Positions 25,872 to 53,420 are shown, counted from the first letter of the stretch. The stretch is DNA of 64,000 nt from Diadema antillarum (GCF_040938485.1 NW_027271045.1:372001-436000), one strand, 5' to 3'. The notes: generated from the letters alone by a model not told the origin. Program-made: numbers and translations.

Positions 25872-26346
25872 TGTAATGTACGTACTACAATGCCACCTAC
25901 CAGCCAGAGTAAGATAATTGCCACTGATGTATCACACAGAATGTATTTTGAAATAAAACCACTCTGCGAACGTATCTGAAAGAGTGAACACTTGCCAATT
26001 TTGTGCCAGTCACAACTTTACATGGTGTCAGGAGTGAGTGGAAAAGAAAATGTCGCGTCTAAAGCCACCCGGACCGCTGTCCCTGGAAGGGAATCTTGCC
26101 AGAAACTTCTCCGACTGGTTAAGGGAATTCAACATGCATGTATATGAGATAGCAACGCAACTGACAGATAAACATGAACAGGTGCGCTGCGCAACATTCT
26201 TGCATACTGCCGGACCACATGTGCAAGCTATTCATCAGATGTTCACCTTCACGCAAGCTGAGGTAGATAAGGTTGCGCCGCTCCAAAAGCTATGTGGTTG
26301 TGAGCATGTTACAGCATCAGAAGAGGAGACTGAACATACATTGTAA
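25872..26346 (+). mobile_element. Gypsy LTR retrotransposon 5' remnant (LTR end, PBS, gag start)
   Basis: ...TTTACA LTR end at 26022; PBS TGGTGTCAGGAGTG (complementary to a tRNA-Leu 3' end) at 26023; ATG 26050 MSRLKPPGPLSLEGNLARNFSDWLREF...ATFLHTAG, a typical Gypsy gag N-terminus. LTR start is approximate. Confidence 0.8.
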
Positions 26347-28313
26347 CAGAGCGCTACCATTGCACAGGCTAGCACACTGAGGTGTGGTTCGATTTAAGAC
26401 TGAACATGCCAACACACATCACTCTGTACAAGTACTGACACTTATAACTCTACCATTCGTAATATTCTCATTGCACTTTGCATGAGTTTTCACCAAATCC
26501 TCTGAATGGAAACCTTGTGCTGAGAGAATTAACAATGACTCATATTAAATTTGTTCTTTGACGCATATAAATATCAAACTATGTGCGTTTTGATAAAACC
26601 TTGTTATCCATTGAATGTGGTAATGATTTCTCACAAGACACAAACCCACATATAGTGGAATGGAATCAGTTTCTGCCAGTGTACACTGTATGACATTAAC
26701 ATCATTGCTCTACACTTGTACATCATGGACACGATACTTGATGACACCCTTGGCAAGTATTTCAATACCAAGCTGCTTTAGATGTATTAAGACTGGCAGG
26801 ACATGCTAGGTGATGGCAAGTACAGTTTAAGCAGAAGTACCCTTGAGAATTAAACTCCAAGTGGAGTACCTCAATCAATTTATAAAAACAAGTATTTTAA
26901 GTGATAAGGATTTTTACACTGTATTGTACAACTGCCATCTTGTAACAAAATGACTACAAAGACTTCAGAAGGTGTATTCATCATAACTGCATACACAAAG
27001 AACAATTTTGTTCTATTTGTTTACAGCTGCCAATTTGTTTACTTCCCTCAAAATGCATCCATAGAAATCATGAATACATCACTAACTTTTCCAATACACA
27101 TGAATTCATAACATGCATTTATTCATGACTTACATTTTACTGTACATTTTTGTAACACTCATCTCTAGCCCTGGGATTGCATAAAAATGCCCAGAAGCAA
27201 AAACCAAGCATATAAAAACTAAAAGCAAATGCATAATGAAGCAATAAACACAAAACAGTCAATACAAAGACGGATAAAAATACAGATATAATGAATAGGT
27301 TAATTCAGAAATGCATGAATACTGCACTACAAGGTAACAAAAGAAGCAATACCTCTACATAAAGTATTTATGACAGGGAAGAATACAGGTCAAGAAAAGG
27401 TCAAAAACAAAATTTTGTTAGGCACAAAGTAGTGGGAGCTGAATTAAACTTCACTTTTTGGATCCGAAATGTCAACAAATCAAACATTTGCAAGAAAGGA
27501 AAGACGATTCTGCCAGCTTACCATGATAACATCACACATATCTCACTTACAGCATTCCTAGAACTTGTGATACCATCTGCTAATTTCCACAATTGTATAT
27601 TAAGTATAGAGAATGTTGAAAAAAAGGTGTTTGAATTCTTAAAAAAAAAAATACATATATCACATAGACCTTGAAGTACAAATGTACATGTATTGCATGA
27701 ACGGTGATCTTGTCTAGTTTTGCTAGTTTCTTACAAATTCACGCACGGTTGCATTCTCACACCTCATCCTCTCCATTAGAACAATGAAATACTTTAAGAG
27801 GGGCTGACTGTTTAAGAAAAGTCTAACTGATGACTGTGGGCCCATTATTGGCAAAGATGCAAATTCAGCTGTATTCTTCTTCTGAGTTATTTGCATATTT
27901 ATTCAAAGTTTTACATGGGAGATTTAAAGACAGAGTTGTGTGACAAATGAAACTTTCTTCATGTGGAACATGGCCCAAGCAAATATCAGGCGAAAAAAAA
28001 ACTGCAGTTTTTCATACTAATGTATAAGGGGCTCATACACTATCTCCATATATGTAGCATTCATAACGAAAAAAAAAAAAAGGAGCTATGCCGGAGAGGA
28101 GGCACAAATTACTAAACTACATTGCATCTGTGAACAACAAGATTCTGGACAGTACTAATGAAGGAGATTACATTGATTGCACCGGGGAAAAGCTTTTTAT
28201 GGATAAGTTTCAATTTCTGACGGTCAAATCAAAGGTAGTTATACTTCCCCCTGCATGGGCCCCACTGAACAAAATAGAGATCCGGAAGCAAACACCTGAT
28301 ACAAACCATATCA

Positions 28314-28640
28314 GGACAACTCCCCCGGAGGACACCTCCCCCGGGGACTACTCCCACCTGACAACTCCCCCAGAGGACCACTCCCCCGGAGGACCACTCC
28401 CCCGGAGGACCACTCCCCCGGAGGACCACTCCCCCGGAGGACTACTCCCCCTGAGGATGTCTCCTCCGGAGGACGTCTCCCCCTGAGGACAACTCCCCCG
28501 GAGTAGTCCCCCGGGTGACTACTCCCCCGAGGACTACTCCCCCGAGGACTACTCCCCCGGAGGACTACTCTCCCGGACGACCACTCCCCCGGAGGACCAC
28601 TCCCCGGACGACAACTCCCAGGTTGACTAATCCCCTGGGT
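28314..28640. repeat. Tandem array of ~16-bp GGACCACTCCCCCGGA units (subterminal repeat of a Mutator-like element)
   Basis: About 20 degenerate units read directly, abutting a MULE transposase C-terminus. Confidence 0.8.
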
Positions 28641-28647
28641 GACCACC

Positions 28648-28908
28648 CCCACCACTTGTTTTTTCCAAACCTTTTGGAAATTCCTCAAGAAGGTCAAGCA
28701 GGAACAAAGTCTCAATGAGATGACGATCGTTCAGGCGCAAGCTGGTGCACCTTCTCCAGCAAGACGATGACAATATGAGCAGGTCAACCGCAGGCTGGTG
28801 CGACTTGTGGAAGGTTATGCCAACCGAGACATTTTAGAGTTCTTGAGGGGAGTGTCCCACAATTTGCATTGGCAGCAGGAAGTCAAAGAGTATCGAGTGG
28901 CATTTTAA
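28648..28908 (+). pseudogene. MULE (Mutator/Phantom-like) transposase C-terminal fragment
   Basis: HP..PTFWKFLKKVKQEQSLNEMTIVQAQAG...Y EQVNRRLVRLVEGY...LEFLRGVSHNL; in-frame TGA at 28768. Confidence 0.8.
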
Positions 28909-51053: not shown

Positions 51054-51237
51054 AAGCCAATGTGTACGTACAGAGCATCCAGCGAATGCTGAGTGTATAA
51101 AATGAATGACAGGTGAATGTCCAACGTATGCAAAGTGATGCTGCGGCAATCACGTGGAGTATCTTGGCTTCACCAAATACTTCACCAAATATCTGAGCAC
51201 TGACAGTCTCAAGTAACATTCTAGCTATCACATAGTA

Positions 51238-51647
51238 CAGTTGAACCTCTCGTATCCGGACAAGTCGGGACTGGGGCTCATCCGGATAAGGGATTTGGCC
51301 GGATATGGGAGACTCAATGCTTTATACATGTACATATACATACACATGTACTGATGTAGCCCATTGTAGGACCACATGTAGTAATGTGTATCCTGCAACC
51401 CTTTCATTGTTACATTTGGGGATGTTAAAATGTCTGAAGGTAAGCAATTTGGAAGGAAATTTGATGTAATGTATGGTAATCATGTTGGAAGTAATATGTA
51501 ATTCATGTGTGTTTGTGTAGGAGCTCTCAAGGAGTTGGGAATCCCCCTTTCCTCCCGTAATTATTTTTAATAAAAATCACAGCGAGATTGCGTCCGTATA
51601 ATAGAGAGATCCGGATAAAGGGAGGCCGGATAAGAGAGGTTCAACTG
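51238..51647 (-). mobile_element. Tigger-like MITE, 410-bp internally deleted copy inserted in the Kolobok element
   Basis: TA-CAGTTGAACCTCTCGTATCCGG ... CCGGATAAGAGAGGTTCAACTG-TA; reverse complement of 17831-18420 lacking ~180 bp. Confidence 0.9.
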
Positions 51648-51949
51648 TAGTAGTTGTAGTGACCTCCACAGCCATAGCAAACATTACCAAAAGTTGGGCT
51701 TTGTAGCCCCATGCATGTCTCATCTTGCCTGATACTGAAGGTGATTTTGAAGACCAGATCAATCTCAAATGTGCCCCTGAAGAATCTGATCAGGATCCAT
51801 ATGTCAATGATCATGAGACAAAACAGGGAGTTCACGAAGATTTGGGATAGGTTGAACAGGCTCTTTGGGGGTGTTCCATCAACTAGATAAGTGCAGCTGT
51901 ACATCAAAGTTGACAGAAATTAAGAGTGTCATGAGGAACTGACAAATTA

Positions 51950-53420
51950 TGAAATTGTGGCAACAATCCAAACAGAGGATGTGGACATTGATTTCTTGTA
52001 TTAGGTGCCAGATTTGCGGAGCAGTTAACGATGCAGATCAAAGTGATTGGAGAGAAGATGATAGTTTGCTGACCATCGACCTGACTTGCATCTGCGGTCA
52101 TCGTGGTACTTACATGTACAACCTTTGCAAGGCAGAATGGGGCAGGACAGGCAATCTCCAGCTGGAAGTGGTAACCTTCTGCAGTGGCAGTCCTTTTCTT
52201 CAAAGCCAGCATCTGTTTCACTTCATGAATATTGCATTCCTCTCTGAGATTGTCTTTCACTTTATCATTTCAGACTATGTTCTTCCATCCATCAACAGCC
52301 TTTTCAACCTGCAGCAACAGGCTCTCTTCTTGTCATTGACAAACTTCTGTCCGACTCACAGGTGTGGGAGGTGTACCTCACCTGGCCTTAGTGCCCAATA
52401 TTGCACTGACACAGTCTAATGGACCATGATACAGGAAAGATTGTCAGCTACAAAGTTGTACCAGTAACTGACACAAGCTCATCTGTTTGAAAGGAGCTTA
52501 AAGGATTCAAGAGCTGTATGGAAGTACTCAAGCAGAATAACATCACTCCACCCAATATCACTATGATCACCATGTACAGATCTGGAAGGAACTAAAGGAC
52601 AACTACCCTCAAGTCAAACATCAATTTGACATCTGGCATCTGCTTAAGTCTATGTAAACAAGAAACTGTGCAAGAAGGTCACAGGTCAAAACTGCAAGGA
52701 ACTGAGTGCCTGGATACCCTCCATCACGAACCACCTCTGATACTGTACCAAGAACTGTGACAAAAATGCAGACAAGTTTGTCCAGATGTGGACAAACTTG
52801 TCTGCACGGCATTCTCTATCACATCACCAATGAGCACATCTTTCAGAAGACACATAGTGCCAGGCTGTGGTCATGATCCAATGGACCTGGAAGTAGCTGG
52901 AAAAGAAAAGGTGGCTGAAAAAAGGGCAGCTCTGCATTCAAGGGTTTGGAGGGTGTCATTCAAGACAAGAGGCTCTTGAAGAACATTAGCCATCTGAGTG
53001 AGTTCTGCCGTACCGAAGAGCTAGAATCCTATCACTCACTCATGCTCAAGTATTGTACAAAGTGGGTGGGATTCAATGAGCCCATGATGAATGCAAGAAT
53101 GCAACTGACCATCATGGACCACAACTCAAATGTTGGACGGAAACAAAAAAAAACATTCCAATGACCTTAAGGACCCAGCCAACTTGGAGACGTGCAGTAC
53201 AGAGTTGTGTGTCCATAAGCAACGGAAAAATGGGAGCCACGGCAGGTATACAAGGACAAAAGTTATGAGTTTGTGTGGGACATCATGGCGGAAACTTTCG
53301 AGGCAAAACAAACTGGGAAACACACCAAAGTGCCTGGCCCAACAGCACACAGGATTGCAAAGAAGTCTCCTCCTCCAAGTCTGTGTTGATTGCTCATCAT
53401 CTGTCTAAATATATTGGTAG
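51950..53420 (+). pseudogene. Kolobok DDE transposase (degraded)
   Basis: CICGH; GRCTSPGLSAQYC..MDHDTGKIV; HQFDIWHLLKS; WIPSITNHL; ELESYHSLMLKYCTK...MNARMQLTIMDHNSNVGR; multiple frameshifts. The N-terminal part may extend to ~51060. Confidence 0.85.

What the first reader, a model, noticed from the sequence alone, without database searches (positions are those of the whole stretch)
26023..53420. Strand-polarised multi-superfamily transposon graveyard: candidate uni-strand piRNA cluster
Seen: nine independent coding TE remnants lie on the + strand (Gypsy 26 kb, MULE 28.7 kb, Gypsy 29-31 kb, EnSpm-like 34.7 kb, piggyBac 37.9 kb, RecQ/Academ-like 39.5 kb, Harbinger Myb 43.3 kb, piggyBac 45-46.8 kb, Kolobok 42-53 kb). 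The only minus-strand piece is a ~260-bp gag inverted within a third Gypsy whose RT is also on +. Nine of nine under random orientation gives a two-sided probability of about 0.004. Established: uni-strand piRNA clusters such as Drosophila flamenco accumulate truncated TE fragments antisense to the cluster transcript. Inference: a minus-strand transcript, possibly read-through from the rhodanese gene ending at ~55.5 kb, would be antisense to all of them. Caveat: I found these by eye and may under-detect minus-strand remnants.
Basis: partly seen in the sequence, partly recalled or inferred. Interest (0 to 1): 0.7.

Follow-up and report, generated by a model that had tools for sequence, protein, structure and literature searches.

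The report
Same-direction transposon graveyard behind a gene
A 27-kb gene-free stretch behind a sea-urchin rhodanese gene is filled with broken jumping genes whose readable coding pieces all point the same way; a piRNA-producing locus would look like this, but so could chance in a scan this large, and no RNA data could be obtained to decide.

Summary
The strand polarity is real. All stop-to-stop ORFs of 50 aa or more in 26-53.4 kb were scanned against Pfam. Eleven of 116 plus-strand ORFs hit transposon-type domains; none of 135 minus-strand ORFs did, apart from one noise-level hit. With fuller genomic copies and homology searches I count nine independent plus-oriented relics. The only minus piece is a 234-bp inverted scrap of one Gypsy element. 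Several reader labels do not hold: the 'MULE' is a tandem-repeat-bearing repeat, the 'EnSpm' has no assigned family, and the 'Kolobok' is a 0.5-kb fragment, not 11 kb. The geometry is right: the rhodanese gene lies on the minus strand, its coding sequence stops at about 55.5 kb, and it points into the pile. New here: A>T skew on the plus strand runs continuously from 25 to 60 kb, across gene and pile, and flips at both ends. Nine of nine gives P=0.004, but this scan has notes on about 729 windows of this genome and flagged at least five other such piles. No RNA run was listed, so piRNA production cannot be tested. Most likely an ordinary nested graveyard (0.45). Rivals: a read-through piRNA cluster (0.2), or selection within a minus-strand transcription unit (0.2).

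The parts
26038..26343 (+).
   Evidence: No Pfam hit. ESM Atlas neighbours are DUF7041/Retrotrans_gag clusters at 0.90-0.94 with few shared features. Only the haplotig matches at DNA level.
28313..28665 (.).
   Evidence: Self-BLAST ladder. Dozens of copies at 83-87% in both orientations. No Pfam hit on either strand.
29045..31024 (+). Ty3/Gypsy family A relic: gag with CCHC knuckle plus the first ~417 codons of pol (protease region), cut off at 31024
   Evidence: zf-CCHC in ORF 29225-30115. 93-94% identical to C807 and C710 copies. The fuller C807 copy has gag 381 aa and pol 1556 aa with PR-RT-RNaseH-integrase.
31025..33855 (.). 2.8-kb high-copy non-coding repeat; orientation cannot be defined
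   Evidence: At least 15 copies at 87-89% in both orientations, with 1.4-kb tandem subrepeats in other copies. No long ORF in two fuller copies. No Pfam hits.
34301..36154 (+). Insertion present in the window but absent from the haplotig; carries coding ORF 34682-35158 of unassigned family, plus (T)n(G)n runs
   Evidence: Gap in the collinear alignment with C758. Four homologous proteins, E 3e-35 to 6e-32, none with a Pfam domain. No Pfam hit. Repeats.
37822..38338 (+). piggyBac transposase fragment (profile positions 109-178)
   Evidence: DDE_Tnp_1_7, E 4.9e-14. Distant copies at 71% on C95 and C506.
39464..40458 (+). SF2/RecQ-like helicase fragment, C-terminal half only
   Evidence: Helicase_C E 4.5e-10 and RecQ_Zn_bind E 3.7e-5. 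Low-copy family at 84-90%. The fuller C88 copy has DEAD plus Helicase_C ORFs on the same strand.
41975..42685 (+). First of three direct copies (~85%) of a 0.7-kb unit; the third copy carries a P2RX7_C-like ORF
   Evidence: Self-BLAST.
42860..44129 (+). Myb/SANT (Harbinger-type) element; its first 298 bp is a high-copy repeat
   Evidence: Myb_DNA-bind_4, E 1.2e-11, in ORF 43333-43623. C618 copy at 81% with a Myb ORF on the same strand.
44192..44425 (-). Inverted 234-bp piece of Gypsy family B, abutting the RT fragment; the only minus-oriented TE piece found
   Evidence: 93% identical to C1868 locus 3966-4192 in reverse orientation.
44426..45199 (+). Ty3/Gypsy family B relic: RT fragment plus a scrap of LTR
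   Evidence: RVT_1, E 2.6e-11 and 7.5e-10. At least 7 copies at 95%. The C1868 copy has RT-RNaseH-integrase ORFs. The LTR scrap matches two places 4.95 kb apart in C1868.
45210..46816 (+). Near full-length piggyBac transposase gene, broken into two ORFs
   Evidence: DDE_Tnp_1_7 positions 1-160 (E 1.2e-28) and 210-348 (E 2.6e-11). Apart from the haplotig, only partial matches at 67-79% were found in the genome.
47615..49406 (+). Second and third direct copies of the 0.7-kb unit; P2RX7_C-like ORF at 48722-49081; origin (TE or pseudogene) unclear
   Evidence: P2RX7_C, E 1.7e-5. Self-BLAST. No copies outside the haplotig among scored candidates.
51235..51649 (.). Young MITE with terminal inverted repeats, absent from the haplotig; no coding orientation
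   Evidence: More than 4000 first-look candidates, copies at 93-96% in both orientations. TIRs read. An inverted copy lies at 17829-18429.
51943..52416 (+).
   Evidence: 127 homologues at E<=1e-3. Of 30 tested, 12 carry PF20700, 4 THAP, 1 MULE. The ESM Atlas gives the same lead. No direct Pfam hit.
55499..57376 (-). 3' part of the rhodanese-domain gene: active-site exon (YCSLGYRSS) within 57122-57376, and last coding exon (YNLEGGLFKW ... stop) at about 55660-55499
   Evidence: Rhodanese Pfam hit on the minus-strand flank set. Motif scans. PDB alignment to rhodanese active-site loops. Sequence with stop codon.
25001..60000 (.). Domain of A>T skew on the plus strand, spanning both the pile and the rhodanese gene and flipping sign at both ends
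   Evidence: 27 of 35 1-kb bins positive, against 4 of 25 in 1-25 kb. Cumulative minimum at 25 kb, maximum at 60 kb. The unannotated 11.4 kb of the pile reads +0.060.

Best explanation
This is an ordinary, mostly old, nested transposon graveyard in the gene-free DNA just downstream of a minus-strand rhodanese-domain gene. At least nine unrelated elements inserted into or next to each other and then decayed: two Ty3/Gypsy families, two piggyBac, a Myb/Harbinger-type element, a RecQ-like helicase-bearing element, a PF20700/THAP-type transposase, a P2RX7_C-like repeat unit and an unassigned coding insertion. MITEs and non-coding repeats are interspersed. All recognisable coding relics happen to lie on the plus strand. 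No function is shown, and the co-orientation is most economically a coincidence picked out by a large scan. Shown: the composition, the nesting, the orientation and the gene geometry. Inferred: that no selection or RNA pathway is needed to explain the orientation.
For: The relics are fragments of different families, with different ages and copy numbers. Most are old or low-copy: the piggyBac at 45-46.8 kb has no other close copy, and 47-53 kb is single-copy. That is what a passive sink looks like, not a trap rich in active families.

Nine of nine gives P=0.004, and seven of seven Pfam-backed gives 0.016. This scan holds notes on about 729 windows of this genome, so a few such piles are expected by chance. 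At least five other windows were flagged for the same pattern, and the follow-ups on four of them reached the same non-decisive result.

Elements whose orientation can be read without coding show no polarity. There are two copies of the same MITE in opposite orientation, 5 poly-A against 6 poly-T runs in the pile, and the largest single element (2.8 kb) has no definable strand.

No Rfam family was found in the window.
Against: The polarity is not limited to the nine relics. The 11.4 kb of unannotated pile DNA also has A>T on the plus strand (+0.060). The whole 25-60 kb domain, including the minus-strand gene, shares this sign and flips at both ends. Randomly oriented debris would not produce that.

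CpG depletion continues from the gene into the old parts of the pile (o/e 0.25-0.37), as expected if the pile lies in a germline-transcribed, methylated unit.

The same geometry, a pile downstream of and antisense to a gene, recurs in at least three other flagged windows.

Two relics are 94-95% identical to Gypsy families with fuller copies elsewhere, so an antisense transcript could target them.
Confidence: 0.45

Rival explanations
1. Uni-strand, read-through-driven piRNA cluster. Transcription of the rhodanese gene, or a promoter near it, continues on the minus strand through 53-26 kb. The long RNA is antisense to all relics and is processed into piRNAs. Selection for antisense piRNAs keeps insertions in one orientation, as at Drosophila flamenco and in mosquito core clusters fed by read-through from upstream genes.
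For: Nine of nine independent relics are on plus and none on minus. The gene is on minus, ends at about 55.5 kb and points into the pile. The A>T skew domain covers gene plus pile and ends at the pile's far edge at 25 kb. CpG depletion is continuous across the gene end. Fragments 94-95% identical to Gypsy families with fuller copies elsewhere are present. Recent haplotype-specific insertions occur in the pile, and the one with a readable ORF is also on plus. Read-through biogenesis of clusters has precedent (bioRxiv 10.1101/2022.08.22.504762). Clustered piRNA-like RNAs matching transposons exist in a sea-urchin gonad (review PMC13666137, citing Wei et al. 2012).
Against: There is no RNA evidence of any kind: none was listed. 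Most relics are old, low-copy or single-copy families that need no silencing. At 27 kb and nine relics the pile is small. The AT skew is confounded, because TE sense strands are themselves A-rich (+0.02 to +0.125). The look-elsewhere effect applies.
Confidence: 0.2
2. The pile lies inside a minus-strand transcription unit whose integrity matters, without piRNA production: an intron of a longer isoform or of an unrecognised gene. Sense-oriented insertions, which bring polyadenylation and splice signals, were removed by selection, leaving antisense ones. This is the well-documented antisense bias of LTR and other elements in introns (PMC1794541, PMC3517506, PMC3088655; listed).
For: The same compositional and CpG evidence for minus-strand transcription through 25-60 kb. 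All relics are antisense to that direction.
Against: The rhodanese reading frame runs through the complete C-terminal motif to a stop at about 55.50 kb. No minus-strand ORF to the left of or inside the pile hits any Pfam family. Two long minus-strand ORFs had no homologues. Mere read-through beyond the last exon would put no selection on orientation.
Confidence: 0.2
3. The co-orientation is an artefact of non-independence: the pieces belong to one composite element or to a locally duplicated block, so there are far fewer than nine events.
For: Three P2RX7_C-type units are local direct duplicates. The two RVT_1 hits and two of the three piggyBac hits belong to single elements.
Against: After merging these, nine families remain. 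They have separate copies elsewhere on different contigs and do not co-occur there. The block's duplicate on C758 is collinear over 50 kb at 92-100% and is best read as the other haplotype, which adds no events.
Confidence: 0.05

Closest known systems
Drosophila flamenco-type uni-strand piRNA cluster
   Same: A gene-free stretch packed with truncated, nested fragments of several TE superfamilies that share one orientation.
   Different: It is 27 kb rather than hundreds of kb. It holds mostly old or low-copy relics rather than fragments of recently active families. No precursor transcript, promoter or small RNAs are shown. The host is an echinoderm, where no cluster of this type has been mapped to my knowledge (own knowledge; the review read, PMC13666137, says only that echinoid gonadal piRNAs have been surveyed in one male gonad).
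Mosquito core piRNA clusters made by transcriptional read-through from an upstream gene (Qu et al., bioRxiv 10.1101/2022.08.22.504762)
   Same: The pile starts about 2 kb beyond the stop codon of a gene that points into it, and its inserts are antisense to that gene's direction.
   Different: Read-through, chromatin state and small RNAs were measured there and are untested here. The content there is viral elements; here it is transposon relics.
Antisense orientation bias of TEs inside introns (PMC1794541, PMC3517506, PMC3088655)
   Same: The relics are antisense to the neighbouring gene's direction. Compositional skew suggests the same transcription direction across the pile.
   Different: The pile lies beyond the gene's stop codon, and no downstream exon was found.
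Ordinary nested TE graveyards in intergenic spacers
   Same: Nested insertions, truncated relics of mixed age, haplotype-specific indels and interspersed MITEs.
   Different: All nine readable relics share one strand, where about half would be expected.

Membership tests
Uni-strand piRNA cluster (flamenco type) | TE fragments from several families share one orientation across the locus | tested here: met
   Pfam hits in 11 of 116 plus ORFs against 0 of 135 minus ORFs, apart from one at noise level. Nine independent plus relics; the only minus piece is a 234-bp inverted scrap.
Uni-strand piRNA cluster (flamenco type) | Long single-stranded precursor transcript antisense to the TEs | not testable with these tools
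   No RNA run was listed for 46-56 kb, so read laying could not be used. Only indirect hints exist: the AT-skew domain at 25-60 kb and continuous CpG depletion.
Uni-strand piRNA cluster (flamenco type) | Dense 24-32-nt, 1U-biased small RNAs from one strand | not testable with these tools
   No small-RNA data could be reached. Echinoid gonadal piRNAs have been surveyed only in one other species (PMC13666137).
Uni-strand piRNA cluster (flamenco type) | Contains fragments of currently or recently active TE families | tested here: inconclusive
   Gypsy A relic is 94% identical to a copy with long gag and pol frames, and the Gypsy B relic is 95% identical to at least 7 copies. Both piggyBac relics, the RecQ-like relic, the P2RX7_C units and the PF20700 fragment are old or low-copy.
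Read-through-fed piRNA cluster (mosquito core clusters) | Lies directly downstream of a gene transcribed towards it | tested here: met
   Rhodanese exons are on the minus strand at 57.1-57.4 kb and 55.5-55.7 kb, with the stop at about 55.50 kb. The pile's right edge is at about 53.4 kb.
Read-through-fed piRNA cluster (mosquito core clusters) | Measured transcriptional read-through and matching chromatin marks | not testable with these tools
   No RNA or chromatin data were available.
Intronic antisense-biased TE accumulation | Pile flanked on both sides by exons of one gene on the opposite strand | tested here: not met
   The coding frame ends with a stop right of the pile. No Pfam-positive minus-strand ORF lies in or left of the pile. 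The test is limited: short exons under 50 aa and non-coding exons would be missed.
Ty3/Gypsy LTR retrotransposon (relics at 29.0-31.0 and 44.2-45.2 kb) | gag with CCHC, and pol in the order PR-RT-RNaseH-integrase, in fuller copies of the same family | tested here: met
   C807 copy: zf-CCHC; Asp_protease_2, RVT_1, RT_RNaseH_2, Integrase_H2C2, rve in that order. C1868 copy: RVT_1, RNaseH, integrase. DNA identity to the window is 94-95%.
piggyBac (relics at 37.8-38.3 and 45.2-46.8 kb) | DDE_Tnp_1_7 transposase domain | tested here: met
   E 4.9e-14, 1.2e-28 and 2.6e-11. TTAA target duplications and TIRs were not established.
   Only ORF 51943-52416 resembles a THAP-associated PF20700 transposase. 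The rest of 47.4-53.4 kb has no copies outside the haplotig except a MITE. 42.9-47.4 kb is three other elements.

The most novel reading that the evidence does not exclude
The pile is one of a class of short, gene-downstream, read-through-fed uni-strand piRNA clusters in an echinoderm. The rhodanese transcript runs on through 53-26 kb, which would explain three things: the A>T skew domain ending at 25 kb, the continuous CpG depletion, and the antisense orientation of all nine relics. At least three other flagged loci in this genome show the same geometry. To my knowledge these would be the first mapped uni-strand clusters in echinoderms, and a second lineage after mosquitoes using gene read-through for cluster biogenesis.
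Probability: 0.2. Interest if true: 0.6.

Novelty: already known. Interest (0 to 1): 0.3.

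Why it matters
If the pile makes piRNAs, it would give a concrete locus for studying transposon defence in echinoderms. It would also extend read-through-driven cluster biogenesis beyond mosquitoes. As it stands it is a well-characterised example of a pattern that this scan keeps flagging in this genome. 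Its main value is a cheap, testable cue: a compositional skew domain that joins the pile to the neighbouring gene. The recurrence also argues for one genome-wide orientation test rather than further locus-by-locus follow-ups.

Tried and rejected
1. RNA evidence: the look-up of sequencing runs on 46-56 kb (kind rna) listed no run. Its cap is one call, so read laying could not be used.

3. Genome baseline of neighbour co-orientation. I planned a TE-protein library from own-genome Pfam hits plus about 1 Mb of control DNA. The 30 best RVT_1 loci turned out to be one narrow clade that did not even detect the window's RT. The baseline was not made.

4. Haplotype identity as an exon detector: identity varies in long blocks (92-100%), not exon by exon, so it was not usable.

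5. Minus-strand candidates: ORFs 47127-47477 and 41035-41388 have no homologues. ORF 44162-44434 and the ORFs of the C758-only 1.9-kb insertion have no Pfam hit.

6. The long minus-strand 'ORF' at 24477-25334 is an artefact of N read as X. The N runs were left untouched.

7. Poly-A and poly-T runs as a retroposon orientation marker: 5 against 6 in the pile, uninformative.

8. piggyBac TIRs: no convincing terminal inverted repeat found.

9. PDB search of the last rhodanese exon: no hit. The PRA1 hit at 56334-56582 is weak and probably intronic noise.

10. The second P2RX7_C-positive ORF was not located. Searches covered the candidates I tried.

11. Rfam scan of the whole window: nothing.

For the Gypsy relics, which are provirus-like, I only compared and described copies.

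Full report
**Where this is.** The window is G000:C157:372001-436000 of a 1.75-Gb assembly in 2963 contigs. Earlier notes of this scan name the organism as the sea urchin Diadema antillarum; I did not verify that name. The window has three N runs (24525-24727, 24939-25077, 61244-61378), which I left untouched.

**Unbiased check of the observation.** I listed every stop-to-stop ORF of at least 50 aa in all six frames and scanned each strand's set against Pfam with the same threshold.
- Inside 26023-53420, 11 of 116 plus-strand ORFs hit at E<=0.01: DDE_Tnp_1_7 x3, RVT_1 x2, P2RX7_C x2, Myb_DNA-bind_4, Helicase_C, RecQ_Zn_bind and zf-CCHC.
- Of 135 minus-strand ORFs only one hit, zf_ULT1 at E=0.0045. 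That is the number of false hits expected at this threshold.
- Fisher's exact P for ORF pieces is 1.6e-4.
- The flanks (36.6 kb) gave only BEN and a weak REP hit on plus, and Rhodanese and a weak PRA1 hit on minus.

**Anatomy.** Individual scans place the hits as follows.

| Position | Hit |
|---|---|
| 29225-30115 | gag CCHC knuckle |
| 38012-38338 | piggyBac |
| 39464-40126 | Helicase_C + RecQ_Zn_bind |
| 43333-43623 | Myb |
| 44557-45014 | RT |
| 45278-46636 | piggyBac, in two ORFs |
| 48722-49081 | P2RX7_C |

Own-genome DNA searches and fuller copies fix the element boundaries and strands.
- 29045-31024 is 93-94% identical to copies on C807 and C710. The C807 copy has a 381-aa gag and a 1556-aa pol in the order PR-RT-RNaseH-integrase, so it is Ty3/Gypsy. 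The window keeps gag plus the protease part.
- 44426-45126 is 95% identical to at least 7 copies of a second Gypsy family with RT-RNaseH-integrase on C1868.
- 44192-44425 is an inverted 234-bp piece of that second family. 45121-45199 is a scrap of its LTR.
- The RecQ-like and Myb pieces have fuller same-strand copies on C88 and C618.
- ORF 51943-52416 has 127 homologues. Of 30 tested, 12 carry PF20700 Mutator-like, 4 THAP and 1 MULE.
- The rest of 47.4-53.4 kb is single-copy apart from a MITE.
- ORF 34682-35158 has four unnamed homologues (E 3e-35). It sits in a 1.85-kb insertion that the haplotig lacks.
- The 'Gypsy' at 26 kb has only a weak language-model lead.
- Three 0.7-kb P2RX7_C-type units are local direct duplicates and count once.
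- The largest single element, 31025-33855, is a non-coding high-copy repeat without a definable strand.

**Count and statistics.** After merging pieces of one element I count nine independent plus-oriented relics. Seven have direct Pfam support and two rest on homologues. There is no independent minus relic. Two-sided binomial P is 0.0039 for nine and 0.016 for seven. The relics belong to families that occur separately elsewhere, so they are not one composite element.

Contig C758:150-200 kb is collinear with window 13-64 kb at 92-100% identity. It is most simply the other haplotype of an uncollapsed assembly, so it adds no independent events.

The look-elsewhere effect is large. This scan holds notes on about 729 windows of this genome. 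At least five other windows were flagged for the same pattern, and the follow-ups on four of them found real co-orientation, fewer independent events than claimed, and no RNA data. A few 9-of-9 piles are expected by chance at that scale.

**Geometry.** The rhodanese gene is on the minus strand. Its active-site exon (YCSLGYRSS) lies within 57122-57376. The next exon carries the C-terminal YNLEGGLFKW motif and runs to a stop at about 55.50 kb. The gene therefore points into the pile, which begins about 2 kb beyond the stop. The pile is not inside the coding part of this gene.

**New compositional evidence.** On the plus strand, (A-T)/(A+T) is negative in 21 of 25 1-kb bins from 1 to 25 kb and positive in 27 of 35 bins from 25 to 60 kb. 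It turns negative again beyond 60 kb. The cumulative curve has a sharp minimum at 25 kb and a maximum at 60 kb. The positive domain thus covers the minus-strand gene and the whole pile and ends at the pile's far edge.

The 11.4 kb of the pile that I could not annotate has the same skew (+0.060) as the annotated relics. CpG observed/expected is 0.53 over the pile. In its old single-copy parts it is as low (0.25-0.37) as in the gene (0.37-0.46), with no boundary at the gene's 3' end.

T>A on the sense strand of transcribed DNA, and CpG depletion of methylated, germline-transcribed gene bodies in invertebrates, are established patterns (my own knowledge; not checked for this species). Both observations therefore fit minus-strand transcription through the pile.

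They are confounded, however. Sense strands of this genome's TE families are themselves A-rich (+0.02 to +0.125). Unrecognised plus-oriented debris would give the same skew, and the left flank is CpG-poor too. Either way, the polarity extends beyond the nine recognised relics, which counts somewhat against pure chance.

The literature offers a precedent for the proposed mechanism: mosquito core clusters fed by read-through from upstream genes, with antisense inserts (bioRxiv 10.1101/2022.08.22.504762). It also shows that echinoid gonadal piRNAs have been surveyed only once. They were clustered and matched transposons, but their strands were not mapped (PMC13666137). The antisense bias of TEs in introns is documented in mammals (PMC1794541, PMC3517506, PMC3088655).

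**Verdict.**
- The interpretation cannot be tested here.
- I put 0.45 on an ordinary nested graveyard whose co-orientation is coincidental.
- I put 0.2 on a read-through piRNA cluster.
- I put 0.2 on orientation selection inside an unrecognised minus-strand transcription unit.
- I put 0.05 on hidden non-independence.
- Interest is modest. The pattern is recurrent in this genome, and one genome-wide orientation test plus one gonadal small-RNA library would settle all the flagged loci at once.

Noticed in passing
L005-L010 (G000:C758:150001-210000) against window 13000-64000: C758 is collinear with the window over at least 50 kb at 92-100% identity, in long blocks of near-identity alternating with blocks of 92-96%. 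Several indels of 0.5-2.4 kb separate the two. This is most simply the second haplotype of an uncollapsed diploid assembly, so own-genome copy counts are roughly doubled.
   Followed up: partly
window 60482-62887: A repeat present in the window but absent from the haplotig. Its first 760 bp is 99-100% identical to dozens of copies genome-wide, so it belongs to a very young, probably active family. It sits near the putative 5' end of the rhodanese gene, in a CpG-rich stretch (o/e 0.86-0.91).
   Followed up: no
window 51235-51649 and 17829-18429: A MITE with about 25-bp terminal inverted repeats, more than 4000 first-look candidates and copies at 93-96%. The copy in the pile is absent from the haplotig, so it is a recent insertion. 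The two copies in the window are in opposite orientation.
   Followed up: partly
window 25000 and 60000: The AT skew changes sign sharply at about 25 kb and about 60 kb. The left domain (1-25 kb) has T>A and G>C on the plus strand, as a plus-strand gene would. A BEN-domain ORF lies on plus at 13774-14232. Together these suggest two convergent transcription units meeting at about 25 kb, next to the two N runs.
   Followed up: partly
window 31025-33855; L041-L044: A 2.8-kb non-coding repeat family with at least 15 copies at 87-89%. In other copies, three or four tandem 1.43-kb units related to its first 550 bp precede it. Its nature is unknown and no long ORF was found.
   Followed up: partly
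window 35690-36376: Three runs of the form (T)19-27 followed by (G)10-20, spaced 280-370 bp apart, inside and just beyond the haplotype-specific insertion. They produce poly-Pro/poly-Lys pseudo-ORFs on the minus strand.
   Followed up: no
G000:C447:650265-688167 and C137:557764-586411 (rows): Gypsy-type RT hits recur at an exact 9.39-kb period, five and four times, all on one strand with long open frames: tandem arrays of one LTR element. LINE-like RTs recur at a 3.55-kb period on C169. The genome has at least 24,976 RVT_1 candidates.
   Followed up: no
window 45199/45210 against C758:180378-182324: The haplotig carries a 1.9-kb insertion between the Gypsy B relic and the piggyBac. Its ORFs are mostly on plus but have no Pfam hit.
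   Followed up: partly
window 24525-24727, 24939-25077, 61244-61378: N runs. The apparent 285-aa minus-strand ORF across the first two is an artefact of N read as X. The unmasked part at 24728-24932 is 88% identical to 10226-10431, so it is a repeat. The N runs were not filled or looked up.
   Followed up: yes
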